A stretch of DNA of 63,539 bases, the filler included, from Octopus bimaculoides (Eukaryota): assembly GCF_001194135.2 (NCBI RefSeq). It is 4 parts of 4 records of this genome, joined end to end, with 100 filler letters (N's around TTAATTAATTAA, not from the genome) between each part and the next. Parts side by side here need not be neighbours in the genome. Positions count along the whole stretch, not along the records: positions 46,174 to 61,652 come from NC_068995.1; 3 more parts are not named here. One strand, 5' to 3'. A model generated the notes under the pieces. It searched no databases and was not told the DNA's origin. It was given only the letters and a program-made list of their open reading frames with translations. The translations under genes were made by a program, and so were the position numbers. This document shows, in pieces, positions 47,645 through 61,789 of this stretch. The first letter of the stretch is position 1, and the number at the start of each line of letters is the position of its first letter.

Positions 47645-48090
47645 CACCATCACCATCACCATCACCATCATCATCTAACGACCATTTTCCATGCTGGCAT
47701 GGGTTGGACAGTTTGACAGGAGCTGACCAGCTGAAGGGCTGTTCAGGCTCCAGTTGTCTGTTTTGTTATAGTTTTTACAGCTAGATGCCCTTCCTAATGC
47801 CAACCACTTTACAGAGTTTAGTGAGTGCTTTTACATAACACCAGCATGGGTGCTTTTTACGTGGTACCAGCACTTATGAAACTGCAAGATGAAGGGTACT
47901 CAGCTGGAAAGAGATGCAGGGGATGAACCTGTATGCAAGGACATGCACGCTTTTACTTGACATGTCTTTTCAAGCTCAGCAAACTGCCAGGAGTCTTGGT
48001 CCCTTATCATCTCCTCTGTGAGTCTTGTCAGTAGATCCTTTCTCACCACTTCATCCCACATTTTCTTGGGTTTACCCCTTCCAAATGTTC
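47645..48090 (-). mobile_element. RTE LINE 3' end (ORF C-terminus plus tail)
   Basis: ORF 47900-48136 contains GTFGRGKPKKMWDEVVRKDL..LTEEMIRDQDSW, the RTE C-terminal motif, followed by the shared tail and a (GAT/GGT)n end. Confidence 0.8.
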
Positions 48091-48602
48091 CCGCTACAAC
48101 TGCATTTTCACAAATAAAACTTAACCTAATTAACACATTTTGTTTTTACACTCATTACCCCCTTTTGACTACCCCATTATTGCTCCACTTTCCTTCAACA
48201 CCCATCTGGACCTTTCTACCATTCCCAGTGGGGCAGTACCACCCACTTTGAGGACCACTGCTTTAAATTAATCATGCGTTATCTTATGGCTATGAGATTT
48301 CGATGATGTGGTTGTCTGTTTTTAGAATAACATTGTAGGGTAAGTGTGAGGGGCCAAATTTGGTCAGTTTCAACATAAAACAGGCAGAATAGTTTGGCCA
48401 GTTTAAATGCCAAAGGGTTAAGAAAGATCTGCAGAGGAAATAAAAGATGTTATTTTCAGGAATTTACCCCAACCAATTTCAAAGATCATGTCTGGTGACA
48501 CGACAAGCACTTACAGTAAATATGTGAGGTCTTTAAGAAATATCAACATCTCTTGTAGTCGCAGGAAGAATGAAATAAGAAATGTCTAGCTTTTGTACTC
48601 AC

Positions 48603-48946
48603 CTCATCAGTGCCACAAGAATTCGGTAAGATCCTTCTTTTCCCATCACTTTGTGAAGACATGTATTTCCTTCAAAGTCCTGTGCATCAATGTTGATGCC
48701 CATACAAGCCATTCCGTATATGACTGTCACAGTTGGCGGGTCCTTAAACAAGTGTGCATTTTCAATCATAAGGTGCAGATAAGATCCTCCTGTGTAGGGG
48801 TCCATGATGTTTAGGTCTGCTCCTGTCATACTCTCAGAATATACGCAGTACTCATTGAGGGTAACAAATACTTCAGTTGGGTTACCTTTCTTAATTGCTT
48901 TATAAAGGTTAGTTTCCATAAATGGTACATCTGTATTTTCTGCCAT
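48603..48946 (-). CDS. First coding exon of an ankyrin-repeat protein (later exons not found)
   Basis: Non-repetitive 114-codon frame with ankyrin motifs (DPYTGGSYLHLMI; GINIDAQDFEGNTCLHKVM..SYRILVALMR), ending at a perfect phase-2 donor AG|GTGAGT (48603/48602). Confidence 0.8.
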
Positions 48947-49319: not shown

Positions 49320-49376
<57 letters not shown>

Positions 49377-50155
49377 ATAATAATATTAGGGATAAAATCC
49401 AAAATTACAGGTAAAAACTCAATTAAAATCAATTTATAAAAGATTAAAATTAAATTGAGCTTTATAGATAAAATATATATAAAATATATAGTTTTAGGGA
49501 AAATAACCAAGTTTCAAGAACTCATCGATGAAAATCCACTATCACATATAGAAAAATTAATAATTAATATATATATATATATATATACCTACACAAATGC
49601 ACACACGCACAAGTGTATTTCTTTACATAACTTTATAAAAATACTTCAAGCAAGTCGTGCTTAATGTACAAAGCAGATGATTGAAATCTATTGACTGACT
49701 ATAGCGTTAATATTAAAAAATCTGTGGCTAACCATAATCATCTGGGAACAAACAATCAGACCAAAACGAACAAACAAACAACCAAAAACAAAACAAACAG
49801 AAAAAAAACCTTTTCTCAATTCCTTTTCTTCCTACAATTGTCCCTGTTTCTGGCTATTTCACATTTTCAGAAATTTTCCATCACATAACCCATACCTGTT
49901 TGACTTGGCTTGTGTCGATATTAAATGACAACCTGGTGGTGTAGTCACTACACTCTGCACTAGTGAGTAATACGGGTGTATAATGTCTGACGTCACATCT
50001 CCTTCACCCCACCAACTCCCATGATCACCACCCGCATCTATCATTTTACCCTTCTTCAGTTTTCGCCTCTGTACATGTATGTGTATGTGTGTGTGTGTGT
50101 GAATATATCTATGTGAGTGTCTTTGTCCATATATGTGAATGTGCATGTTCATATA

Positions 50156-50482: not shown

Positions 50483-51163
50483 TAATAATAATAATAATTT
50501 ATTCTTTTATTGGCCACAAGGGCTAATATATACAAACATAAAAGGGCATACAATGACATTAAAAGACAAAAAAAAAAACTAGATGATACAATGGGTTTTG
50601 ATGTTCATGCACACAGTAAATAACTAAAAAATTAAACAAGTAAAACTCCCAATAGGGGGAGGTGCTTAATTCCAAATAACATCAGGTTCTTTAATTTGCA
50701 AGATAAAGTAATTAGTTGAGCATAATAAAAATTCAGAACTGCATTGATACGCCAAAATTGAAAACAATCTGTGTAAAATTAAAGGGGGCTGATTTTGTGA
50801 ATGAAACAAACTAGATCCAGATTATCAACCGAGGATGGTGCCTCTATTTTGAGTATTGAGTTCATTCTTAGAATTGTCAGAGCATCAAAAAAAAAAAAAC
50901 AAAAGGTGCTTTTGAAGTATTCTTTTGACACTTTACATTCTGAGTTTAAAACCTGCTGTCTGCATGTTTATTTTTGAGTATTACTCATATCAGAATAGTA
51001 GGATTGGTAAGGTGACAACTACCACCATGTGACATACATACATACATCTATATATACATATATACACACAAACACACACACACATAAACATATATACATA
51101 TACATATATGTGTGTGTGTTTATATATGTATATACACACACACAGATACATAAATACACACAC

Positions 51164-51232
<69 letters not shown>

Positions 51233-51729
51233 TACATATATATATANNNNNNNNNNACACACACACACACATACATATATATATATAGATCCCCCCATTT
51301 CCAAACCAAAATAAGGGATTTGCAGCATATTAGGAGGTCAGGGTACTTCATTCCACATAAAAAATCTGATTTTCGGGGGTGAAAATCGTGCGTGTTAATC
51401 TGAAAAATTACCCACTTGAATGCGGTCATGCTGGAGTACCTCTTTATGTATATATATATCTTCAAAAGTGAGTTCATATTTATGTTTATACCCTTATTTC
51501 TATACATACATTCCTAAATATGCGTTTGTATATATATATATATATATATAAACACATGTACATATACTGTATATAAATATACACACACAAACAAAGTGTG
51601 TTGAGGAATGTTGCAACACCAATTGTTAGTGTGTAGAATGCAATGTATGCGATGCAGGTTTGATTCCTATTTACAATAATAATAAGAAGAAGAAAGAATA
51701 AGATTGCAGTTTAATATTTCTGGAAATAT

Positions 51730-54700
51730 TTATTTGTCATAATGAAAGAAAGCAAAAGATTGACGTCCAGGAATAATTCCAAAAACCATCAAAGAATTTT
51801 CTGAAACATCAAAACCAAGAACTTCAAAGACTTCATTATCATCATTCCTGAGGAGTAAATATTTTGCATTATCTTCAGATATCAGGATTTCATTATCTTC
51901 TGATATCAGGATTTCATTATCTTCAGATATCAGGATTTCATTATCTTCGGATGTTTCCTCTTCAATATGTCGAGGTATTTCGTAAATATTGTTTCTTATA
52001 TCTGTTATATAAACACATTCACCAATTATGGTTAAATGAGGTCTTGGAATATAATATTCCACAGCATAAAATTTTCTTCCTCCTATTCTTATCCTCCTCA
52101 CCAACAACTTTTCCCTGAACAATTCCACAACACACAAATTATTCCACTTTCCAGACTCCTTCTTCCTCTCCCTCCTCATAACAACAACATCACCAAAAGA
52201 TGTGACTCCCACATCATCCACCACGGAATCTCCCTCCAGTCTTCCATCTCTCCCCATCTCCCCCCTACATACTTCATCTTTACATTTCCCATCTTTGATA
52301 TCAACCACATCCACATGATAAGAGTCAAAGATGTCGGGGTCTTTGCAACAATAGTAATACTTGTTGTTCTTCCATATTCTTCGGTATTTCTCGTCTCTCT
52401 CTACTTGAGTTATGTCTCTAATATAATGACCACCACACACGAGTTGATTGTCGTTGTATTTATAAATCCTGTTGTAGTATTTCTCAGTTCTGATGGTTTT
52501 TAAACGATAGAGATCCCTGTCGAAGATCCTCATTTCTCTCCCAAAGGCAACAATGAAACATTCATCTGTCCACCGACATATGTCCAGTGGTGCTTCTTCT
52601 TGTTTTTCATGTTGAAGTATGTCCACTGTTGTTGTTGTTGTTGTTGTTGTTCTGAGTAATATGACACTTTCTCGAAACATCAACACACTCACATTCTCAT
52701 TTAACTTAATTAGTTTACTGTTCCAGTCCATAATGTCCCACAAATCATAATCAACAGGTTCCTCGAATGCAGGAATGGAAAGAGGGACCATTGCTGTTCT
52801 ATGTGGAAGTCGCCTCACTGATATTTCATCAATTCCTGAATTACTAATCTCCGCTATGTAATTACCACATCTCACCTTTAATCTACCTTTACCAATTATT
52901 TCACCTGATTTACCTCTTCTTCCTCCATCTTCATCTCCTCCTTTGTATTCCAATTTATTAATTAATTCATTACTGAATATTTCCTTGTTTGTCTGAGATG
53001 TAATGGAAGGGAAATGAAGACCAGAATCAAGATTTAATAACGACACAGATTCCAGAATGTTCACTTGGTCCCCATCAATCTTTATGCAATGACATTCAAT
53101 CAATTCAATATGTACACACCAGTAAATACCCCCCACTTTTCTCCATATTACACCATAAGGGATGAGACTTGTCCAAGCTTGAGATTTCTGCAAATCTTTT
53201 CCATTCAGTTGAAATATTTCTTTTCTTTTAGGAACCGTGGCTATTATGTGTGTTTCTTGTGTAAAACACACACCACCAACTAAACTTGCAACATTTCTGT
53301 GACATAGCAACTCCCCGTCTTTATCAAATATTTTAACATTTCCATTATTGGCTTTTTCACACACAACTGTCTTTCCTTCATCAGAAATATCAAAATCTTT
53401 TACTTGAACAGGAAATTCGTCTGTTTGCAAACGAGCAACCGGGAAGCTTTCTCGATTCACCATAAACAACCCTTCAACATACAATTCATTCCTTCTCTTC
53501 CTGGGGATTCCAACAAACCTTGGTCCTTTACACTTTATACTGAAGAAATTTACTTCAGCTTTATAAATTCTTCCATTTAAAAATATTCTGTTGTATTCCC
53601 CATTCTGGGTCAAACACAAAATGTTTTTATATCCAGATGAACCTAAACATTTCTCCCACCCACCATAAATGTACAAAAAACTGTCATCAATTGTCATCTT
53701 GTCACCACTAAAATCAAAATACTCCATGTAGTGTCTAACTGAATGTAAATAATGACCATCACTGTTGAAGAAAATGATGAATCTTTCATTTAAGACAATG
53801 ATGACATCTTCAGCAGTAACTTTAATATCCTTGATGTCATTATGATAATAATTTCCATCTCTGTCTCTCGTTATTAATGGTTCAGGTATGTCTATTTGTT
53901 TTATTTCCTTCACACTCGAATGTATTTCATCAATATCAGCAAAATACAAACTCCATCCATCTCCCCATTTATTACAAACCAGTTGATTGTTTGATAAAGG
54001 AGCCATACAATCATATTTATTTCTTGTTTGGTAAATTACCAACGACAATGGAAATTCCACTTTTAATGTCAACAGCTGGTATTTATTACCAGAATAATCC
54101 CAATTCGTAATGACCAGTGTGTTTGACTGCCATCGATACATTTTAATATAGTGATAAACATTCAATTTGATTGAATCCAAAAGTTGACCATCCAATGTGA
54201 ATATCTTAATCTTTCCATTCTCCTTGTCCCATCCTGCAATCAGATTATTTTCACTAATAACCAAATGATCAATCTCCACTGGTCTTTCGTCTCCCAAATG
54301 TTGAGGGAAAGGAATAGGTCTGGCTTTATCAGAAACTGTCAAATCCTGTAGATATAAAGCCGAAGACAACATTTCACTGACAGAAATGTTTCTAGAAAAT
54401 ACATCTACCAGGTCGATATAATAATTAAATTGATTGTTTGTAACGAGATCATTAACTAACAAATTATGATCATTTATAGCAAACATACGGCTGTTGTCTA
54501 TCAGATAAACAAATGTTTGGTCAATAGATCCACCGTAGAGATTATGGGGATGTTTCACATGGGACATTAAAACACTGGGGACCATCTGACAGTTGCCATG
54601 ACCACCACCACTAATGTACTTGAAGAAAGCTTTTGTTTTGGACTCTGAATCATTGGACATCATCTCAATACTACTAATACTACCATCATAACTACTAATA

Positions 54701-57600
54701 CTACCATCACTGCCATTACTCTGACGACGTGCACTGCCATGACCACCATGACCACCACCACTAATGTGCTTGAAGAAAGCTTCTGTTTCGAACTCTGAAT
54801 CACTGGACACCATCTCAATACTACTAATACTACCATCACTGCCACTACTCTGACGACGTGCACTGCCATGACCACCATGACCACCACCACCTATTCTAGT
54901 GTTGTACTGAAATGCTTTTCCACTAGTAACAAACATTTGGTCAATAGATACACCAGAGAGATTGGGGGGACATTTCACATGGGACATTAAAACACTGGGG
55001 ACCGTCTGACTGCTGCCATGACTACCACCACCTATTCTAGTGTTGTACTGAAATGCTTTTCCCCTAGTAACAATTAATAGCTTTTGTGTTTCCTTTTCTA
55101 TTGATAATGATTTCACAAAAAAAGGGATATTAATTCTATGAATTCTTTCAACTTGTTTATAATTTTTCTTAATGGCTAAAATATCTAAATGTGATGGTTT
55201 ATCGCAATAACAAATAATTTCACCTTCATCCATCTTACACACCCGTACATAAGGCTGCCTTAATGATACACTTCTCACTGTCTTTGATGGGTTTCCAATG
55301 ACCCTTAATTGTTTCTGTAGGGGTAATGTGACACCTATTTGATTAGAATCCCATCGACATATATCTGTAGCTGTAGATGGCAGAGATAATCTCGACACAA
55401 TGTCTCCTTCATTAGAAATGTATAACAAGCAATCATGGTTGATGTCGGACACCACCACCTGCCCATTCTCCAGATTACATATTTCGCCAATGACAAGTTT
55501 TTTGTCATTCTCCTTTTCTTTGAGTCGTATATTTAGATTTCTGATATAAGGGTTTTTCGTGTGCAAACAACAGCCAGACGACTGGTCTTGATACTTGTAA
55601 AGAAGGACCCTGTTGATTTGAGTGTCTGGTACATAAACAGTTCCTTGGAAAACAGCAATGTGAGGATGAACAGGGAAAGGCAGTTCCCACTGCCATTTCA
55701 TTTTTCCATATATATCATAACATATCAGAATAGAGTGTCTCTTGAAGAGGACATAAAAATAAACATTATCAGAGTAGATGTGATGAGGGTAGCCATAGAA
55801 TGGAAGGTATTTTTGAAAAAGTTCTTTACCACATGTGGAATAAAATACCATTTTATTTTCGCTTCCATCTATGACTACAAAATTAATTGGAGTTGCAGCA
55901 ATGGTGACAATATAATGTTCCAGAGAAATTCTTTCTGTAATGTCAACTCTATCTTCGTTGATCAATAGGATATGGACCTCATTTTTGTTTTCAGTGGTGG
56001 TCACAGCTAAACACTTATTTGATACAATATGACATATTTTCCTGTAATCAATTTGGACCTTTATTAAAGGGCCTTTTCTTAGTTCAGGACAGGTGATAAA
56101 CTGAAATCCTTTCATTTCACGATAAAATATCAGGAATCTGTTTGCGTTTATTCTACAACAGAAAGAAGGAAGCTCAAGGAAAACCAAATTATTTTGGCTA
56201 ACTATTTTCTCATTATCAGTGAATAATTTAGCTTTCTTGTTTTCGTAAATTATTAATATAGAAGATGTAGACATAGGTAGAATATTTGTAATGTAACAAT
56301 CCTCAATATAAATATTGTCTTTCAAACTGGGGGTATGTAGCTGGTGGTTGTATGACAGTTTGGGCCAAATGTCTTTATTTATTTGAATGGCATATGGTTT
56401 GCCAAAATAATCTGTCACCAAAATGGCATCTTTACCAACAGAAATAGAGCAGCATTTCCTGCCAATATCCCTCTTTGTCACACCACCTTTAGCTGAAATC
56501 CTGTAAATAATTTGTCCCTGGAGGATATAGAAATAGCTTTGGTACAGAGAGATTTTACTTGGGATGTGCAGAGAATGGGTCTCTACCTCCCATAACTGTT
56601 GGCCATCCATATTATAACAGATTATTCTGTTAATGCTGGAAAATGTAATTAAAAGTATGTTGTGGACTCCTACAGCAATATCTGTAGGTGTTTCTTTGGT
56701 AATGAATTGGTGCTTAATTATATTCTCTTCCCAATCCATTTGGTAAACAATTTTACCAAACATTTCTATACCTATAAGTGTAGAATGTTCCAAGTAACTC
56801 ACCATATGTAACCCCAACTCTATCCTTTTAATCTTGAAAGTTGTGGGGCTGATAATAAGAATGATTTTTTGGAAGGGGAGGGTTGCTAGAACCATGTCTT
56901 CACCGATTCTGGTGAAACTGGTGACAGAAGATGGACAATGAACATCATTTCTGTCACCGTCTCTTGTCACACAACATATTGTCATACAATGGCGGGAATA
57001 TGTTAGTACTCCCTCCTGTATTGCTATAATATTGGATATTGTGCTTTTGTCAAATTCTTCTCCAGATTCCTCAATCTTTGTTTCTCTGGTCACAACTGGG
57101 CAAAGAGGCCGAAATTTTGTGGTTACTTTTGGTGGTTCAGTGGTCTTGTGTTTGTATGGGTTACAGGTGACATAAATGTCAGAGAGTCTTTGTTGAAACC
57201 AATCAAGGTTTTGGTGAACAAAATCATTATTTTGTTTTGTAAATTCCAGAAATCTTTGCATTTTACGTTTGATTTTACGTAAAATACAAGATCCATCTAA
57301 ACCCATGGAGTCCATGTGATTACATTCAACTTTTACATAATCTATAAACATATTGATGTGGTCTGTTTTGATTATTGTTCGGTAACATGTCACAATATGA
57401 AGAAAATTTGGTAACATGGACATTTCCCATTCTTCAGATTTCTTTGTGTCTTTTGTTTCCTGTTCTTCTGTTTTCTTTGTGTTTTGTGTATATAATATTT
57501 GGGGAGGAAATGGTGCAGTTTCCTTATAAATTGATGTTGTATCACAGACTATGACAGGAATGAGACCCAAAATTTTGTTTTCTTCATTAATCTTCTCCAT
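51730..57600 (-). CDS. Uncharacterised 1956-aa single-exon protein with about 6 tandem degenerate NHL-like beta-propellers
   Basis: Uninterrupted 5871-nt frame in AT-rich DNA. ATG in AAAATGG context with an in-frame TAA 18 nt upstream. Recurrent blade motifs include PTDIAVG..LLIT...NRIICYNMDGQQL, ATDICRWDSNQIGVTLP, GKIKIFTLDGQLL, VKIFDKDGELL and PLDICRWTDECFIVAF. No obvious signal peptide or transmembrane segment. Confidence 0.9.
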   Translation of the reverse strand: MEKINEENKILGLIPVIVCDTTSIYKETAPFPPQILYTQNTKKTEEQETKDTKKSEEWEMSMLPNFLHIVTCYRTIIKTDHINMFIDYVKVECNHMDSMGLDGSCILRKIKRKMQRFLEFTKQNNDFVHQNLDWFQQRLSDIYVTCNPYKHKTTEPPKVTTKFRPLCPVVTRETKIEESGEEFDKSTISNIIAIQEGVLTYSRHCMTICCVTRDGDRNDVHCPSSVTSFTRIGEDMVLATLPFQKIILIISPTTFKIKRIELGLHMVSYLEHSTLIGIEMFGKIVYQMDWEENIIKHQFITKETPTDIAVGVHNILLITFSSINRIICYNMDGQQLWEVETHSLHIPSKISLYQSYFYILQGQIIYRISAKGGVTKRDIGRKCCSISVGKDAILVTDYFGKPYAIQINKDIWPKLSYNHQLHTPSLKDNIYIEDCYITNILPMSTSSILIIYENKKAKLFTDNEKIVSQNNLVFLELPSFCCRINANRFLIFYREMKGFQFITCPELRKGPLIKVQIDYRKICHIVSNKCLAVTTTENKNEVHILLINEDRVDITERISLEHYIVTIAATPINFVVIDGSENKMVFYSTCGKELFQKYLPFYGYPHHIYSDNVYFYVLFKRHSILICYDIYGKMKWQWELPFPVHPHIAVFQGTVYVPDTQINRVLLYKYQDQSSGCCLHTKNPYIRNLNIRLKEKENDKKLVIGEICNLENGQVVVSDINHDCLLYISNEGDIVSRLSLPSTATDICRWDSNQIGVTLPLQKQLRVIGNPSKTVRSVSLRQPYVRVCKMDEGEIICYCDKPSHLDILAIKKNYKQVERIHRINIPFFVKSLSIEKETQKLLIVTRGKAFQYNTRIGGGSHGSSQTVPSVLMSHVKCPPNLSGVSIDQMFVTSGKAFQYNTRIGGGGHGGHGSARRQSSGSDGSISSIEMVSSDSEFETEAFFKHISGGGHGGHGSARRQSNGSDGSISSYDGSISSIEMMSNDSESKTKAFFKYISGGGHGNCQMVPSVLMSHVKHPHNLYGGSIDQTFVYLIDNSRMFAINDHNLLVNDLVTNNQFNYYIDLVDVFSRNISVSEMLSSALYLQDLTVSDKARPIPFPQHLGDERPVEIDHLVISENNLIAGWDKENGKIKIFTLDGQLLDSIKLNVYHYIKMYRWQSNTLVITNWDYSGNKYQLLTLKVEFPLSLVIYQTRNKYDCMAPLSNNQLVCNKWGDGWSLYFADIDEIHSSVKEIKQIDIPEPLITRDRDGNYYHNDIKDIKVTAEDVIIVLNERFIIFFNSDGHYLHSVRHYMEYFDFSGDKMTIDDSFLYIYGGWEKCLGSSGYKNILCLTQNGEYNRIFLNGRIYKAEVNFFSIKCKGPRFVGIPRKRRNELYVEGLFMVNRESFPVARLQTDEFPVQVKDFDISDEGKTVVCEKANNGNVKIFDKDGELLCHRNVASLVGGVCFTQETHIIATVPKRKEIFQLNGKDLQKSQAWTSLIPYGVIWRKVGGIYWCVHIELIECHCIKIDGDQVNILESVSLLNLDSGLHFPSITSQTNKEIFSNELINKLEYKGGDEDGGRRGKSGEIIGKGRLKVRCGNYIAEISNSGIDEISVRRLPHRTAMVPLSIPAFEEPVDYDLWDIMDWNSKLIKLNENVSVLMFRESVILLRTTTTTTTTVDILQHEKQEEAPLDICRWTDECFIVAFGREMRIFDRDLYRLKTIRTEKYYNRIYKYNDNQLVCGGHYIRDITQVERDEKYRRIWKNNKYYYCCKDPDIFDSYHVDVVDIKDGKCKDEVCRGEMGRDGRLEGDSVVDDVGVTSFGDVVVMRRERKKESGKWNNLCVVELFREKLLVRRIRIGGRKFYAVEYYIPRPHLTIIGECVYITDIRNNIYEIPRHIEEETSEDNEILISEDNEILISEDNEILISEDNAKYLLLRNDDNEVFEVLGFDVSENSLMVFGIIPGRQSFAFFHYDK
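51867..51948 (-). repeat. Coding 24-bp tandem repeat (EDNEILIS)x3.4
   Basis: CATTATCTTCAGATATCAGGATTT at 51867, 51891 and 51915, plus a partial copy at 51939. Confidence 0.95.
54508..55071 (-). repeat. Coding nested tandem duplications (offsets 150, 129, 141 and 21 bp)
   Basis: The ATGACC/TACCACC anchor recurs at 54598, 54748, 54877 and 55018; the outer copies are offset by 420 bp. Confidence 0.9.
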
Positions 57601-57718
57601 TTTATGAATATAAAATTATTATCTTTTTCTGTTAAATATATTCTTTTCTCTTGATTTTGTTTTCTTCCTTTGGAATACAATTTATCTTGTCACAATTCAC
57701 TAATTTTTTACAGCAAAG
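57601..57718 (-). promoter_or_regulatory. 5' UTR part of the large exon, with splice acceptor
   Basis: TTTTCATTTTATTTCAG|C acceptor (AG at 57720-57719), implying at least one upstream non-coding exon. Confidence 0.65.
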
Positions 57719-57921
57719 CTGAAATAAAATGAAAACTTTATTAGTTTTGTGAAAAGTTTTTGATAAAATAATATTTACTTGATTCATTCAAACAATTTCA
57801 AAGAAAACACACATTTCATTAAATATATTAAACAAATCTTTTATTTGACAGTTAAGTTAAACATTTAAATTATTTTCAATGGTATAATCATTGAAGATAT
57901 AAATACACCATTATCTTTATT

Positions 57922-58135
57922 ATTTTCTATTCTAGGTACAAGGCCCCAAATTTTGGGGGAGGGGGCCCAGTCGATTAGATGGACCCCGGTACGCAACTGG
58001 TACTTAATTTATCGACCCCAAAAGTATGAAAGGCAAAGTCGACCTCAGCAGAATTTGAACTCAGAACGTAAAGACAGACGAAATACCGCTAAGCATTTCG
58101 TCCGGTGTGCTAACGTTTCTGCCAGCTTCCCGACT
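57922..58135 (-). mobile_element. Full-length SINE family A with 18-bp target-site duplication
   Basis: TACACCATTATCTTTATT occurs at 57904-57921 and 58136-58153, flanking a complete copy. Confidence 0.9.
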
Positions 58136-59443
58136 TACACCATTATCTTTATTGACTAAATATAAGTGATGAAGAAAAGTTTTGTAGTAAGACAGAATAT
58201 AAGTATTTTGTTGAGGTTATTTCTACAGATATTCAATGGAAATTATAGCCAGGACTGATTTCCTGCTACAACGTTTCATATTGAAATGTCAGATGGAAAC
58301 CATGAGATCAAAGACAAAAACATCTGTTGTTTGTTCTCATTGTTTACATCTGATGTCTCGATACGAAACGTTTTAGCAAAAAATCAGAGCCAGCTATAAT
58401 CTCTATAGAATTTTTATAGAATAATATGAAAAGAACTGCTAACGAAGTAGAATGTGGTGTTGACTTATAAAACGATTTAATATATTTTGCAGTAATTTAT
58501 GGTTGCATAATGAAATACCATGTTCCTACAAATCAGGAATAATAATTATATGCATTGCAAATGATGTGACAGTCATGGTTGGCTTGGTTTCCACCATATT
58601 TACCTGGATTAAGAGATATCAGTAAAGCTGGAAATGAAACTGTTCTTAACCTGACAAATGCTGTAAATCTCTCGACATTTCAATATAATCCACACAATTA
58701 CCATACACAACATTGATTAACTTGGAAAGCTTATCAAAAGATGGGCTTTCATATAATCACACTGATACACAACATGGTGAGAGGATCGTTATTATTTGTT
58801 CCTGATTGAGATAATAAAGATTGGTTAATGAATAAGCCTAATTAATGAAAGGTAGGTTCATCTAAATTATATTCAATATAAGGGACAATGTTTGGGTAGC
58901 AATGAGAAAGATGTGTTTGTATGAAAAAGGGGTTTGGCAGGTGACTGTTACTCTATTGACCCCAGGAGGAATGAAAAGTAAAAGCAACCTTCTTCAGGAT
59001 GTCAGCTCTTTGAATATACATGGACTAAACAACAACATATTTTTGGAAAAAGCTGGATAAGGCTATGTTGTTGTTATTGCTGTTGTTGTTGACAACAAAG
59101 TTTATAAAGACAAAACCAGATAATTGCAAATATTTCAACTGTAAAATTAAATTGGAATTAATGTTTATGTTTCACTTGTGCCATTCTACTTGGTTTATTT
59201 TGGGGAAGAAAAACCTACAAAAACTCTCATAATAATTTATATTAGACTTTAATCTAATTGTATATGTATTTATATACACATACATACATATATATGAAAG
59301 AATATGTATAATATATACACAAAGATGCACATATATATATTTATACATCCATACGTCCGTATGTATGTATGATCATCATCATTTTACCCCCACTTTCCAT
59401 GTTGATGTTATCATTTTGCCTCACAATTTTGTTAGCTCATCAC

Positions 59444-59499
<56 letters not shown>
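59444..59499. repeat. (AGT)n microsatellite, tail of the adjacent SINE
   Basis: Directly visible. Confidence 0.95.
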
Positions 59500-59650
59500 C
59501 CCTTTCTTACTATAGGAAGAAGGCCTGAAATTTGGCAAGAGGGGACTAGTCGATAACATCGACTCCAGTGCGTAACTGGTACTTATTGAATTGACCCCAA
59601 AAGGATGAAAGGCAGTCGACCTTGGTGGAATTTGAACTCAGAATGTAGCA
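59500..59650 (-). mobile_element. SINE family A fragment
   Basis: AACTGGTACTTATT..GACCCCAAAAGGATGAAAGGC-GTCGACC..GAATTTGAACTCAGAA. Confidence 0.75.
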
Positions 59651-60241
59651 GCAGATAAGTCATAATAATGATAATAATAACAACAACAATAATGATAATA
59701 ATAATAATGGTTTCAAATTTTAGTACAAGGCCAGCAAGTTCAGGGGAGAAGGTAAGTTGGCAAATTTTAAACTCTGAACGTAAAGACAAACAAATAGGAT
59801 TTTGTCTGGCGTGCTAACGATTCTGCCAACTCACCACCCACATACTAATGATAATTATAATTAATTCTGGTTTTATTGGCCACAAGGGCTAATATAAATT
59901 AAAAACATGTAAGGACAAAGACAGGACGAAGGTTACAAAAGGTTTTGTCCGAAAAGAAAACGTTCGTGTAAACAGTGAGGAAAACAGAGAAAGTGGAGTC
60001 ATTAGAATGGTATTTATACTGACACTTTGTGTTCTGGGTTCAAATTCTGGCAAGGTCAACTTTGACTTTTATTATGCAGGGGTCAATAATTTAAATACTA
60101 GTTTGAAGTGATGGTCTTATAGAATAAAATTCTGGACAAGATGCCTTGCAGTATGTATTGTGGTTCTTTGTGATCTGAGTTCCAATCCCATTGTGGCCAT
60201 CCTGGGTTGCAGACTTTAATCTATCACCTAATTTCACACCA

Positions 60242-60350: not shown

Positions 60351-61176
60351 CTGGAAAAAAAACAGGGTCATATACAAGGCCCTTCTCCCTCGACTAAGCT
60401 TTTAAAAAAATAAGTTTACAAAGGACAATCAATTTATCTGCCATAAAATTAATTTACAAATTTTAAATTTCACTTGAGACTTAGAAATCTACTGTAAACT
60501 ACTTAAAATGATGTATCCTTAGATGAACACATCCATCAAACAGTTTTGACATAGTTATAACACAACTATACTTTATATTATATTCTGGAAATGAAATGTT
60601 TTACTTGTGATGTAACACTGTAAAATGTTTAAACAATGTCTAGTCTATAAAATGGTGTGTGAAAATAAAACTATATATAACAATTTTTTTCTGTTTGAAA
60701 TAAGTCTAATGAATGTTTAGCAACGTAAATGTGTTGGTAAATTGTGTGTTAAATAAATAAATATCAGAAGAATATTATTTACCAGAGTCAGTTATTGGGT
60801 CTTGATTTCGGCTTGAAGTCTTTCTATCTCAGAAATATTCTGTGAGTCTGCTTCGCTCGAATAGCAATGAAAATATGGCAACAGTTAAGAGGATACTTAT
60901 AATATATCAGTGAGTAGTAGGCATTGCCTCCTCATGTGTGTATATATAAATATATGTGTGTATACATCTATATGTATGTGTGTGTATATATATATATATA
61001 TATAGATATAGATATATAGATATACACATTTATACATAAATGTCGGTGTGTATATGTGTGTGTGTGTATACATCTATATGAATATATATATATATATGTA
61101 TATATACATATTTATACATAAATGTCTGTGTGTGAATACACACACACACACACACACACACACGTATATATGTATT

Positions 61177-61341
61177 GGCACAGGAGTGGCTGTGTGGTAA
61201 GTAGCTTGCTTTCCAACCATATGTTTCCAAGTTCAGTTCCACTGCATGGCATCTTGGGCAAGTGACTTGTACTAAAGTTTCGGGCCGGCCAAAACTTTGT
61301 GAGTAGATTTGGTAGACGGAAACTGAAAGAAACCCATCATG
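61177..61341 (+). mobile_element. tRNA-derived SINE family B
   Basis: GGCACAGGAGTGGCTGTGTGGTAAGTAGCTTGCT..GTTCAGTTCCACTGC..GGTAGACGGAAACTGAAAGAA. Confidence 0.8.
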
Positions 61342-61789
61342 TGTATATATATATATATATATATTATTTTATTTAAAAGAGTTCCAACTCTGTTTTTTAT
61401 GTTTTTTATTTATATTCTTGTAAAATTTATGTGGGATATAGAATATGGAATATATAATATATAATATAAAAAAAGATGGATGGTACAATGAAATGAAGTA
61501 TTGAATGTCTTATTGAATATATGGAATATGTCTTATTGAATATATGAAATATTGAGTGTTCAATATAAAGGATGAAATATATAAATATATAAAGGCGAAT
61601 ACGTATTTTCTATACCTTGTGGTATTTCATCATGGCCGGTATGACAGACTATNNNNNNNNNNNNNNNNNNNNNNNNNNNNNNNNNNNNNNNNNNNNTTAA
61701 TTAATTAANNNNNNNNNNNNNNNNNNNNNNNNNNNNNNNNNNNNNNNNNNNNGCTACACTGCTTGGCATTCGCGCCGGAAGCTCCAATA

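What the first reader, a model, noticed from the sequence alone, without database searches (positions are those of the whole stretch)
51730..57600. Giant intronless gene encoding a chain of about six NHL-like beta-propellers
Seen: an unbroken 1956-codon frame with a strong start context, an upstream in-frame stop and one acceptor 118 nt before the ATG. The whole CDS therefore lies in one exon in a genome whose neighbouring genes have multi-kb introns. After a roughly 185-aa N-terminal region, the protein falls into about six 230-280-aa blocks built of blade-like motifs (xxDIxxxxxxxxxVT/ P..I.V.D....RI..Y/F...G.LL). Known: NHL six-bladed propellers usually occur once per protein behind RING/B-box/coiled-coil (TRIM-NHL) and bind RNA or protein; molluscs have expanded divergent B-box/NHL families. 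Inference: this is a lineage-specific propeller array lacking RING/B-box, possibly a multivalent intracellular recognition protein (immune sensor or RNA binder), and I know of no described equivalent.
Basis: partly seen in the sequence, partly recalled or inferred. Interest (0 to 1): 0.8.

Follow-up and report, generated by a model that had tools for sequence, protein, structure and literature searches.

The report
Octopod giant six-propeller NHL-derived gene
This is a real but uncharacterised Octopus bimaculoides gene (LOC106878473) whose single coding exon encodes six linked NHL-type beta-propellers; it belongs to a multi-copy family found only in octopods, and two of its propellers evolve under diversifying selection, which suggests a recognition role that has not been tested.

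Summary
The 1956-codon ORF (window 51730-57600, minus strand) is real. It is Octopus bimaculoides LOC106878473, annotated only as "uncharacterized protein". The protein has a variable tail, a conserved helical N-terminal domain, and six mutually homologous modules of about 250-330 aa. Three modules fold in AlphaFold2 as 23-24-strand units, which fits six blades of four strands. Family profiles retrieve TRIM-NHL propellers (Brat, TRIM2/3/71, Thin, Mei-P26) from the whole PDB, with E down to 4e-7 for single modules. There is no RING, B-box, signal peptide or transmembrane segment. An exhaustive HMMER scan of 1.84 billion proteins finds relatives only in Octopus (three species, dozens of copies, many on one chromosome) and Argonauta. 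Ten of the eleven relatives' gene loci fetched also have a single-exon CDS; one O. vulgaris paralogue has intron(s). Overall dN/dS is high (0.4-0.85), yet all eleven ORFs examined are intact. Propellers 4 and 6 show dN/dS above 1 in two independent pairs, while the other modules show about 0.3-0.6. The family is transcribed, but expression of this particular copy is weak and the proposed 5' acceptor is unverified. The function is inferred: an intracellular multivalent recognition or scaffold protein. I rate it a new variant of a known kind, of moderate to high interest.

The parts
51730..57600 (-). Complete single-exon CDS of 1956 codons plus stop. It is Octopus bimaculoides LOC106878473 (XP_014783180.1 is a 5'-truncated model of it that lacks 50 aa).
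57616..57618 (-). In-frame TAA 18 nt upstream of the ATG. The start context is ATAAAATGG.
57719..57720 (-). Candidate 3' splice acceptor AG after a T-rich tract, 118 nt before the ATG. Its use is not shown.
57421..57600 (-). Variable N-terminal tail (aa 1-60). It differs between paralogue types and is basic in the conservative subfamilies.
57151..57420 (-). Conserved N-terminal helical domain (aa ~61-150), predicted as four helices. The motif GLD..FL...L.WF..L..IY..NPY is shared with the Argonauta proteins.
56293..57045 (-). Propeller module 1 (aa 186-436), modelled at low confidence. It carries an NHL-type signature blade at aa 306-344. Its dS is unusually high, which suggests a mosaic or gene-conversion history.
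55531..56292 (-). Propeller module 2 (aa 437-690). It has 23 predicted strands at pLDDT 50-84, which fits about 6 blades.
55021..55530 (-). Propeller module 3, first part (aa 691-860). This is the most conserved stretch of the family and carries an NHL-type blade at aa 699-743.
54541..55020 (-). Disordered Gly/Ser/His-rich insert with internal duplications (aa 861-1020). Its length varies from about 10 to 160 aa among paralogues.
54874..55023 (-). A 150-nt (50-aa) tandem-duplication unit. It is absent from the RefSeq model and skipped in some RNA reads, its ends are non-canonical, and it is present in some DNA runs. It is probably polymorphic.
54325..54540 (-). Module 3, second part, plus a short helical linker (aa 1021-1092).
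53473..54324 (-). Propeller module 4 (aa 1093-1376). It has 24 strands (6 blades of 4) at pLDDT 70-88, is NHL-like (Brat E=5e-6), and is fast-evolving with pN/pS above 1.
52726..53472 (-). Propeller module 5 (aa 1377-1625). It holds the best NHL-type blade, at aa 1395-1440 (TRIM3 E=4e-7), and is conserved. The AF2 model of it is poor.
51733..52725 (-). Propeller module 6 (aa 1626-1956). It has about 24 strands at pLDDT 75-90, is acidic, and is fast-evolving with pN/pS above 1. It contains a Thr8 run and a SEDNEILI repeat insert.
51867..51952 (-). A 24-nt tandem repeat of 3.6 copies encoding SEDNEILI. The equivalent insert is greatly expanded in paralogue P0034.

Best explanation
Window 51730-57600 (minus strand) is a genuine protein-coding gene, O. 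bimaculoides LOC106878473. It belongs to a gene family restricted to incirrate octopods (Octopus and Argonauta).

Shown: the protein has a variable tail, a conserved helical domain of about 90 aa, and six tandem, mutually homologous modules derived from the six-bladed NHL-type beta-propeller. It has no RING, B-box, signal peptide or membrane anchor.

Inferred mechanism: it is an intracellular, multivalent binding platform. Conserved propellers 2, 3 and 5 and the helical domain would form the structural and partner-binding core. Propellers 4 and 6, whose surface residues turn over under diversifying selection, would act as variable ligand-recognition faces, as NHL, WD40 and Kelch propellers use their top-face loops. 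Tandem and dispersed duplication, a mosaic divergence pattern that hints at gene conversion, and dN/dS above 1 in two modules together resemble a birth-and-death recognition repertoire engaged in some evolutionary conflict, with innate immunity or non-self sensing the leading candidate.

Confidence by step: real gene and family membership about 0.95; six NHL-derived propellers about 0.8; recognition or arms-race function about 0.35.
For: Gene and family:
- The ORF exists and is identical to XP_014783180.1 apart from one 50-aa indel.
- The O. vulgaris locus L001 is colinear through both flanks.
- All 11 ORFs examined, of 1674-1956 codons, are intact at dS 0.05-2.5.

Architecture:
- AF2 shows almost only short beta-strands after aa 190. 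Three modules have 23-24 strands at pLDDT 50-90.
- Foldseek hits multi-propeller proteins at E 1e-10 to 1e-15. Among the single-domain-sized matches in the viral library, the highest target TM-score is an NHL-repeat protein (TMt 0.66).
- The six modules are linked by hhalign at 87-96% probability over 130-230 in-register columns.

NHL origin:
- The family profile's top 12 PDB hits are all TRIM-NHL domains.
- Module 4 hits Brat at 5e-6 and module 5 hits TRIM3 at 4e-7. NHL domains are also the top hits for modules 1 and 3.
- Paralogue P0047 scores 18.5 bits on Pfam NHL against a cut-off of 20.

Localisation: no signal peptide or transmembrane segment in any subfamily.

Selection:
- Propellers 4+6 give pN/pS 1.56 (p=0.010) and 2.01 (p=0.004) in two independent pairs. 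Modules 2+3+5 give 0.54 and 0.33. The Nd:Sd contrast has p about 1e-5 in each pair.
- Variable sites in module 4 are enriched in loops, 42% against 24% in strands (p=0.001).

Expansion: 38 clusters at 90% identity in Octopus, many on one O. vulgaris chromosome, with local tandem pairs.
Against: - Pfam NHL does not hit this protein even at E<=10.
- Both AF2 models are of low overall confidence (mean pLDDT 40 and 50). Modules 1, 3 and 5 are poorly modelled, and ring closure was never inspected.
- Foldseek global TM-scores are 0.1-0.3, and its PDB top hits are WD40 or YWTD multi-propeller proteins, not NHL proteins.
- The blade motif also resembles an idealised WD40 blade (2ymu). Module 2 matches other propeller blades, and module 6 matches nothing.
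- dN/dS used the simple Nei-Gojobori method on few copies, with no correction for recombination or multiple tests, so relaxed constraint could explain part of the signal.
- Propellers 4 and 6 are neutral to acidic (pI 6.3 and 5.1).
- There are no tissue, infection-response or binding data.
- Reads matching this copy exactly are few.
Confidence: 0.6

Rival explanations
1. It is a constitutive multi-propeller scaffold or adaptor, like DDB1, IFT-A subunits or EMLs, with a cell-biological role specific to octopods. On this view the high dN/dS reflects relaxed constraint after duplication, not an arms race.
For: The top Foldseek matches are such scaffolds. Two subfamilies have one member per Octopus species within a single 90%-identity cluster, and omega is 0.39 for the pair tested. 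There are no known signalling or effector domains.
Against: pN/pS is significantly above 1, not merely close to 1, in propellers 4+6 in two independent pairs. Dozens of paralogues is unusual for a scaffold. The Foldseek ranking is driven by query length and has TM-scores of 0.1-0.3.
Confidence: 0.22
2. It is an RNA-binding regulator that works like the TRIM-NHL proteins Brat and LIN-41/TRIM71: each propeller reads short RNA motifs, and six propellers give combinatorial mRNA recognition.
For: The closest sequence relatives with solved structures are the RNA-binding NHL domains of Brat, TRIM71, TRIM2/3 and Mei-P26. Modules 2 and 3a are basic, with pI 8.7 and 9.2.
Against: The fast-evolving modules 4 and 6, and also module 5, are acidic or neutral. 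Similarity is limited to the structural blade core, not to known RNA-contact residues, which were not examined. No RING or coiled-coil effector part is present.
Confidence: 0.12
3. This particular copy is a silent or decaying duplicate, a young pseudogene or unexpressed paralogue, even though the family itself is functional.
For: Only 263-470 reads per run match it exactly, and 80-88% of those match only in part. The best RNA runs hold 11-18% of its 31-mers. Most reads carry fixed differences from the window, which is what reads from paralogues would show. Omega against the O. vulgaris counterpart is 0.77.
Against: The frame is intact over 1956 codons with zero stops. The syntenic O. vulgaris counterpart is also intact. 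Modules 1, 2, 3 and 5 are under purifying selection in the same comparison. RNA reads support the RefSeq-like allele across the 150-nt indel. Only about 6% of each of three runs, of unknown tissue, was sampled.
Confidence: 0.05
4. The ORF is the cargo or coding part of a mobile element or an endogenous viral element, which would explain the lack of introns and the many dispersed copies.
For: The CDS is intronless, the copies are dispersed over several chromosomes, and repeats and SINE-like elements lie in the flanks.
Against: Homology between paralogous loci starts inside the CDS and ends about 20 nt after the stop, and there are no shared termini, TIRs or LTRs. No transposase, RT, integrase or capsid domain is found. 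Viral fold hits are generic propellers. An orthologous locus sits in a colinear context in another species. Purifying selection acts on four modules.
Confidence: 0.02

Closest known systems
TRIM-NHL proteins (Brat, LIN-41/TRIM71, TRIM2, TRIM3, TRIM32/Thin, Mei-P26)
   Same: They share the blade signature of the six-bladed NHL propeller. These proteins are the top-ranked natural PDB hits for the family profile and for modules 1, 3, 4 and 5. Both groups are intracellular.
   Different: TRIM-NHL proteins have one propeller behind RING, B-box and coiled-coil domains. This protein has six propellers behind an unrelated helical domain, with no RING or B-box. Most of its blades have diverged beyond Pfam detection.
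LRP/LDLR-type chains of YWTD six-bladed propellers (LRP2, LRP4, LRP5/6, Sevenless)
   Same: Several six-bladed propellers sit in a single polypeptide. These proteins appear among the Foldseek hits for the first half. From my own knowledge, YWTD and NHL repeats belong to the same six-bladed propeller superfamily.
   Different: Those proteins are extracellular, with a signal peptide, EGF spacers between propellers and a membrane anchor. None of these features is present here.
Multi-WD40 scaffolds (DDB1, IFT-A subunits, UTP proteins, EMLs)
   Same: They are intracellular proteins built of two or three fused propellers, and they give the best Foldseek E-values for both halves.
   Different: They have seven-bladed WD40-type propellers and are ancient, conserved and single-copy. 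The modules here have 23-24 strands, which fits six blades, are NHL-like by sequence, and belong to a lineage-restricted, expanded family.
Fast-evolving expanded recognition families (TRIM5/finTRIM B30.2 domains, NLR LRR domains)
   Same: This is an evolutionary analogy only. Both show lineage-specific expansion, clustered paralogues, and dN/dS above 1 confined to the presumed ligand-binding repeat modules.
   Different: There is no sequence or fold relationship. No NACHT, RING, death-fold or other effector domain was detected, and no immune function has been shown.

Membership tests
NHL repeat (Pfam PF01436) | A match to the Pfam NHL model at or above its gathering score | tested here: not met
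   The window protein gives no NHL hit even at E<=10. The best result in the family is P0047, with 18.5 bits against a cut-off of 20 and E=0.002.
NHL repeat (Pfam PF01436) | Significant and specific sequence-profile similarity to solved NHL domains | tested here: met
   The top 12 PDB hits of the family profile are all TRIM-NHL domains (E 4.6e-4 to 0.11). Module 4 hits Brat at 5e-6 and module 5 hits TRIM3 at 4e-7. Modules 1 and 3 have NHL domains as top hits at only 0.016-0.05. Modules 2 and 6 do not hit NHL domains.
NHL repeat (Pfam PF01436) | Six four-stranded blades of about 40-50 aa forming a propeller of about 250-300 aa | tested here: inconclusive
   Modules 2, 4 and 6 have 23-24 predicted strands at moderate to good pLDDT. 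Modules 1, 3 and 5 are of low confidence. Coordinates could not be inspected for ring closure. One fold match to an NHL-repeat protein has TMt 0.66.
TRIM-NHL family | An N-terminal RING, B-box and coiled-coil (tripartite motif) | tested here: not met
   No RING or B-box Pfam hit in the window protein or in nine relatives. The N-terminus has few Cys or His residues. The protein is not a TRIM-NHL member.
WD40 repeat propellers | Pfam WD40-type hits and seven- or eight-bladed geometry | tested here: not met
   Only faint sub-threshold hits to WD40-type propeller models are found. The 2ymu hit is a sum of 12 near-identical blades scoring 8.6-13 bits each. The modules have 24 strands, not 28.
YWTD/LDLR class B propeller arrays | A secretory signal, EGF spacers and a YWTD motif | tested here: not met
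   No signal peptide or transmembrane segment, and no Ldl_recept_b or EGF Pfam hits.
Transposon or viral ORF | Mobile-element enzymes, or conserved termini shared between copies | tested here: not met
   No such domains are found. Homology between paralogous loci is confined to the CDS.
Octopod six-propeller family (unnamed; LOC106878473-like) | Full-length homology with the same order: helical domain followed by six modules, encoded in a single coding exon | tested here: met
   Identity to family members over the full length is 29-82%. The CDS is single-exon in ten of the eleven relatives' loci fetched; one, P0019, has intron(s).

The most novel reading that the evidence does not exclude
Incirrate octopods evolved a private family of intracellular non-self or pathogen sensors (or another conflict-driven recognition system). 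Each member is a single polypeptide of six NHL-derived propellers. Two hypervariable propellers (4 and 6) serve as the diversifying ligand-binding heads, and an N-terminal helical domain serves as the oligomerisation or signalling end. This would be a receptor architecture with no counterpart in other animals.
Probability: 0.25. Interest if true: 0.85.

Novelty: new variant of a known kind. Interest (0 to 1): 0.62.

Why it matters
Cephalopods have no adaptive immunity, and their innate recognition repertoire is poorly known. A taxonomically restricted, expanded family with module-specific diversifying selection is a concrete candidate for such a repertoire, and it can be tested directly by measuring expression after challenge, by pull-downs, and by solving structures. 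Apart from function, a chain of six NHL-type propellers is an architecture I could not find described. It also shows how a lineage-restricted 'orphan' giant gene can be traced back to an old repeat, the NHL blade, by profile methods when Pfam fails.

Tried and rejected
- Self-BLAST of the whole protein returned only the trivial diagonal. Chunked BLAST and hhalign were needed instead.
- A single-sequence Pfam scan and a phmmer search of the PDB found nothing.
Per-module jobs would have been the better choice.
- The third word-indexed homology search added nothing new.
- Transposon or viral cargo was rejected, because homology between paralogous loci is limited to the CDS and no mobile-element domains are present.
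- An internal 150-nt intron was rejected, because the ends are non-canonical, the segment is flanked by direct repeats, and it is present in some DNA runs.
- A retrocopy of an intron-containing parent inside the family was rejected, because the conservative subfamilies and the Argonauta gene also have single-exon coding sequences.
- A WD40 assignment based on the 2ymu hit (E=2e-28) was rejected as an effect of summing repeated blades.
- Literature searches for the locus names, for octopus NHL proteins and for multi-NHL chains found nothing relevant.
- Tissue of expression could not be determined, because run and sample names are coded.
Full report
**Observation.**
The piece contains one long ORF, at 51730-57600 on the minus strand, of 1956 codons starting at ATG. 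At 30-39% GC, about 7% of random codons would be stops, so by my own calculation the chance of such a frame is about 1e-63.

The start context is ATAAAATGG, with A at -3 and G at +4. An in-frame TAA lies 18 nt upstream. A T-rich tract followed by AG at 57719-57720 would start an exon 118 nt before the ATG.

RNA reads do not confirm use of that acceptor. Depth is 1-3x over 57564-57683 and zero over 57684-57875, and there are no junction reads.

**Identity.**
The protein is identical to O. bimaculoides XP_014783180.1 (LOC106878473, 'uncharacterized protein') from residue 331 onward, except for one 50-aa gap. That gap equals a 150-nt 'skip' (54874-55023) seen in a few RNA reads.
- It is bounded by direct repeats and has no GT..AG ends in any register.
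- Exact DNA contigs and reads from some runs cover it, but none from a 2015 run do.

I read it as a polymorphic tandem-duplication unit, not an intron. The CDS is a single exon.

**Family and distribution.**
- Two word-indexed searches of 5.8 billion proteins found 34-38 relatives, all in Octopus bimaculoides, O. vulgaris and O. sinensis, and all scoring above 1600 bits with no weak tail.
- An exhaustive HMMER scan of 1.84 billion representatives, using a profile of the C-terminal half, found only 27 proteins. Every one of the ten I looked up is from Octopus, apart from two proteins of about 1920 aa from Argonauta hians.
- The family includes two conservative subfamilies, LOC106880634 and LOC106882419, each with one member per Octopus species inside a single 90%-identity cluster. 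The expanded clade to which the window gene belongs has many members on O. vulgaris chromosome OX597841.1, at 9.6, 10.3, 21.9 and 22.7 Mb, including a local tandem pair.
- Ten of the eleven relatives' gene loci fetched have a single-exon CDS, including the conservative subfamilies and Argonauta. One O. vulgaris paralogue (P0019) has intron(s). Intronlessness is therefore ancestral to the family.

**Not a mobile element.**
Against O. vulgaris locus L001, homology continues colinearly through both flanks, so L001 is the orthologous locus. Against paralogous loci, homology begins 200-450 nt inside the CDS and ends about 20 nt after the stop, with no shared termini. No transposase, RT or viral domains are found. 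Viral fold hits are generic propellers.

**Architecture.**
Pfam and single-sequence PDB searches are empty.

AlphaFold2 on two overlapping 1200-aa halves gave low overall confidence, with mean pLDDT 39.7 and 49.7. The secondary structure is clear all the same:
- four helices at aa 64-146;
- then almost only 5-8-residue strands;
- a disordered insert at aa ~861-1020.

Three segments are usable:
- aa 437-669: 23 strands, pLDDT 50-84;
- aa 1093-1376: 24 strands, pLDDT 70-88;
- aa 1626-1876, plus the C-terminus: about 24 strands, pLDDT 75-90.

Each of these fits six four-stranded blades.

Foldseek places both halves among multi-propeller proteins (IFT-A, DDB1, UTPs, LRP2) at E 1e-10 to 1e-15, but with TM-scores of only 0.1-0.3. 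In the viral library, the single-domain-sized match with the highest target TM-score is an NHL-repeat protein (TMt 0.66, rmsd 5.5).

Profile-profile comparison of six sub-alignments cut from 11 diverse loci links all modules over 130-230 in-register columns:

| Module pair | hhalign probability |
|---|---|
| M1-M2 | 87% |
| M2-M3 | 90% |
| M2-M4 | 93% |
| M3-M4 | 92% |
| M3-M6 | 96% |
| M4-M5 | 95% |
| M4-M6 | 95% |

**NHL relationship.**
A profile of 14 diverse family members was searched against all 177,635 distinct PDB sequences. Its top 12 hits are TRIM71, Brat, TRIM2, TRIM3 and Thin, all TRIM-NHL propellers, at E 4.6e-4 to 0.11. Three different octopus blades align to the canonical NHL motif.

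Per-module searches gave these results:

| Module | Top PDB hits |
|---|---|
| M4 | Brat 5e-6, Thin 5e-5, TRIM2/3/71 |
| M5 | TRIM3 4e-7, TRIM2, TRIM71, Thin, Brat, Mei-P26 |
| M1 | Brat 0.03 |
| M3 | TRIM2 0.016 |
| M2 | designed 'Bagel' propeller blades and their parent cell-surface protein |
| M6 | nothing |

The nominal top hit of M5 is a repetitive WD40 protein, 2ymu, at E=2e-28. It is the sum of 12 near-identical blades scoring 8.6-13 bits each, whereas TRIM3 reaches about 33 bits through a single matched stretch.

Other evidence points the same way. Paralogue P0047 nearly reaches the Pfam NHL threshold (18.5 against 20 bits). An iterated blade HMM finds one or two recognisable NHL-type blades in each of modules 1-5, and the rest are too diverged.

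Taken together, the array is NHL-derived. It does not pass the Pfam NHL test, and it is not a TRIM-NHL protein, because it has no RING or B-box.

No signal peptide or transmembrane segment exists in any subfamily, and the N-termini are charged or basic. An intracellular location is therefore inferred.

**Selection.**
All 11 ORFs are intact.

| Comparison | omega |
|---|---|
| Distant paralogues | 0.43-0.56 |
| Conservative orthologue pair (dS 0.10) | 0.39 |
| Window gene vs its closest O. vulgaris copies | 0.67-0.77 |
| A recent O. vulgaris paralogue pair | 0.85 |

The excess is concentrated in particular modules. In two phylogenetically independent pairs, propellers 4+6 give pN/pS 1.56 (Fisher p=0.010) and 2.01 (p=0.004). 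Modules 2+3+5 give 0.54 and 0.33. The Nd:Sd contrast has p about 1e-5 in each pair. In propeller 4, variable sites are enriched in predicted loops, 42% against 24% in strands (p=0.001). Propeller 6 shows no such enrichment.

Module 1 has several-fold higher dS than the rest of the gene, which points to a mosaic or gene-conversion history.

Caveats: the method was Nei-Gojobori counting on few copies, with no recombination model and several comparisons.

**Transcription.**
The best RNA runs hold only 11-18% of the locus's 31-mers. At 97% identity, thousands of reads align, but they carry fixed differences and the depth is very uneven, so they come mainly from paralogues. At 100% identity only 263-470 reads per run remain, and most of those match only in part.

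The family is clearly transcribed. This copy is at best weakly expressed in the three runs sampled, whose tissue is unknown.

**Interpretation.**
Shown: a real, lineage-restricted gene encoding a helical domain plus six NHL-derived propeller modules, evolving fast, with two modules under apparent diversifying selection.

Inferred: an intracellular multivalent binding platform whose propellers 4 and 6 are variable recognition faces. The duplication pattern and selection regime resemble immune or other conflict-driven recognition families.

Rivals are a constitutive scaffold under relaxed constraint, a Brat- or LIN-41-like RNA binder (weakened by the acidic or neutral charge of modules 4-6), a silent duplicate, and mobile-element cargo (rejected).

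**Novelty.**
No paper in the searchable library mentions these loci or a chain of NHL propellers. The blade is a known kind. The six-propeller, RING-less, octopod-only architecture is a new variant of it.

Noticed in passing
window 57918-58127 (also about 59488-59655 and 61165-61364): SINE-like interspersed repeats lie upstream of the gene. Many copies at 80-90% identity occur in every paralogous locus fetched, and RNA reads pile up on the 57907-58147 copy. By eye, part of the sequence looks tRNA-like.
   Followed up: partly
window 49340-49567: A 229-bp segment is 94% identical to sequence 5 kb upstream of a paralogue on a different O. bimaculoides chromosome (L002 5057-5279). It is probably a young interspersed repeat.
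   Followed up: no
window 48599-48946 (minus strand): A 115-aa ORF downstream of the gene has weak ankyrin-repeat hits (Ank_4 E=0.012, Ank_5 E=0.011, both below threshold). It may be an exon of a neighbouring gene or a chance ORF.
   Followed up: partly
window 47900-48136 (minus strand): A 78-aa ORF contains '...GRGKPKKMWDEVVRKDLL...', which from memory resembles the C-terminal tail of LINE-type reverse-transcriptase ORFs. It has no Pfam hit.
   Followed up: partly
window 51029-51560, with an N-run at 51247-51256: Long TG/TA-type microsatellites and a 10-N assembly gap lie about 200-700 nt downstream of the stop codon. Chimeric and 'opposite strand' read joints cluster there.
   Followed up: no
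window 56293-57045 (module 1): dS between the window gene and its closest O. vulgaris copies is 0.22-0.44 here, against about 0.05-0.10 in the rest of the gene. This suggests that this segment has a different history, through gene conversion or recombination among paralogues.
   Followed up: partly
L003 1-18460 (O. sinensis CM016888.1): Paralogue P0026 lies inside a gene annotated on the opposite strand, which spans more than 18 kb and has a product listed as 1956 aa. It may be a nested or antisense arrangement, or an annotation artefact.
   Followed up: no
L006 (O. vulgaris OX597841.1, 21.87-21.90 Mb); proteins P0007 and P0013: The gene model of paralogue P0019 spans 12.8 kb, so it has intron(s), unlike the others. 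Another 1788-aa family member lies 5 kb upstream of it. Models P0007 and P0013 are fused to C2H2 zinc-finger and DUF4371 domains, which probably reflects merged neighbouring genes.
   Followed up: no
window 51867-51952 and 52627-52651: The CDS contains coding microsatellites: a 24-nt repeat of 3.6 copies (SEDNEILI) and (TGT)8, which encodes a Thr8 run. The first is greatly expanded in paralogue P0034 (ESEDQ... repeats), so the acidic insert in propeller 6 varies in length.
   Followed up: partly
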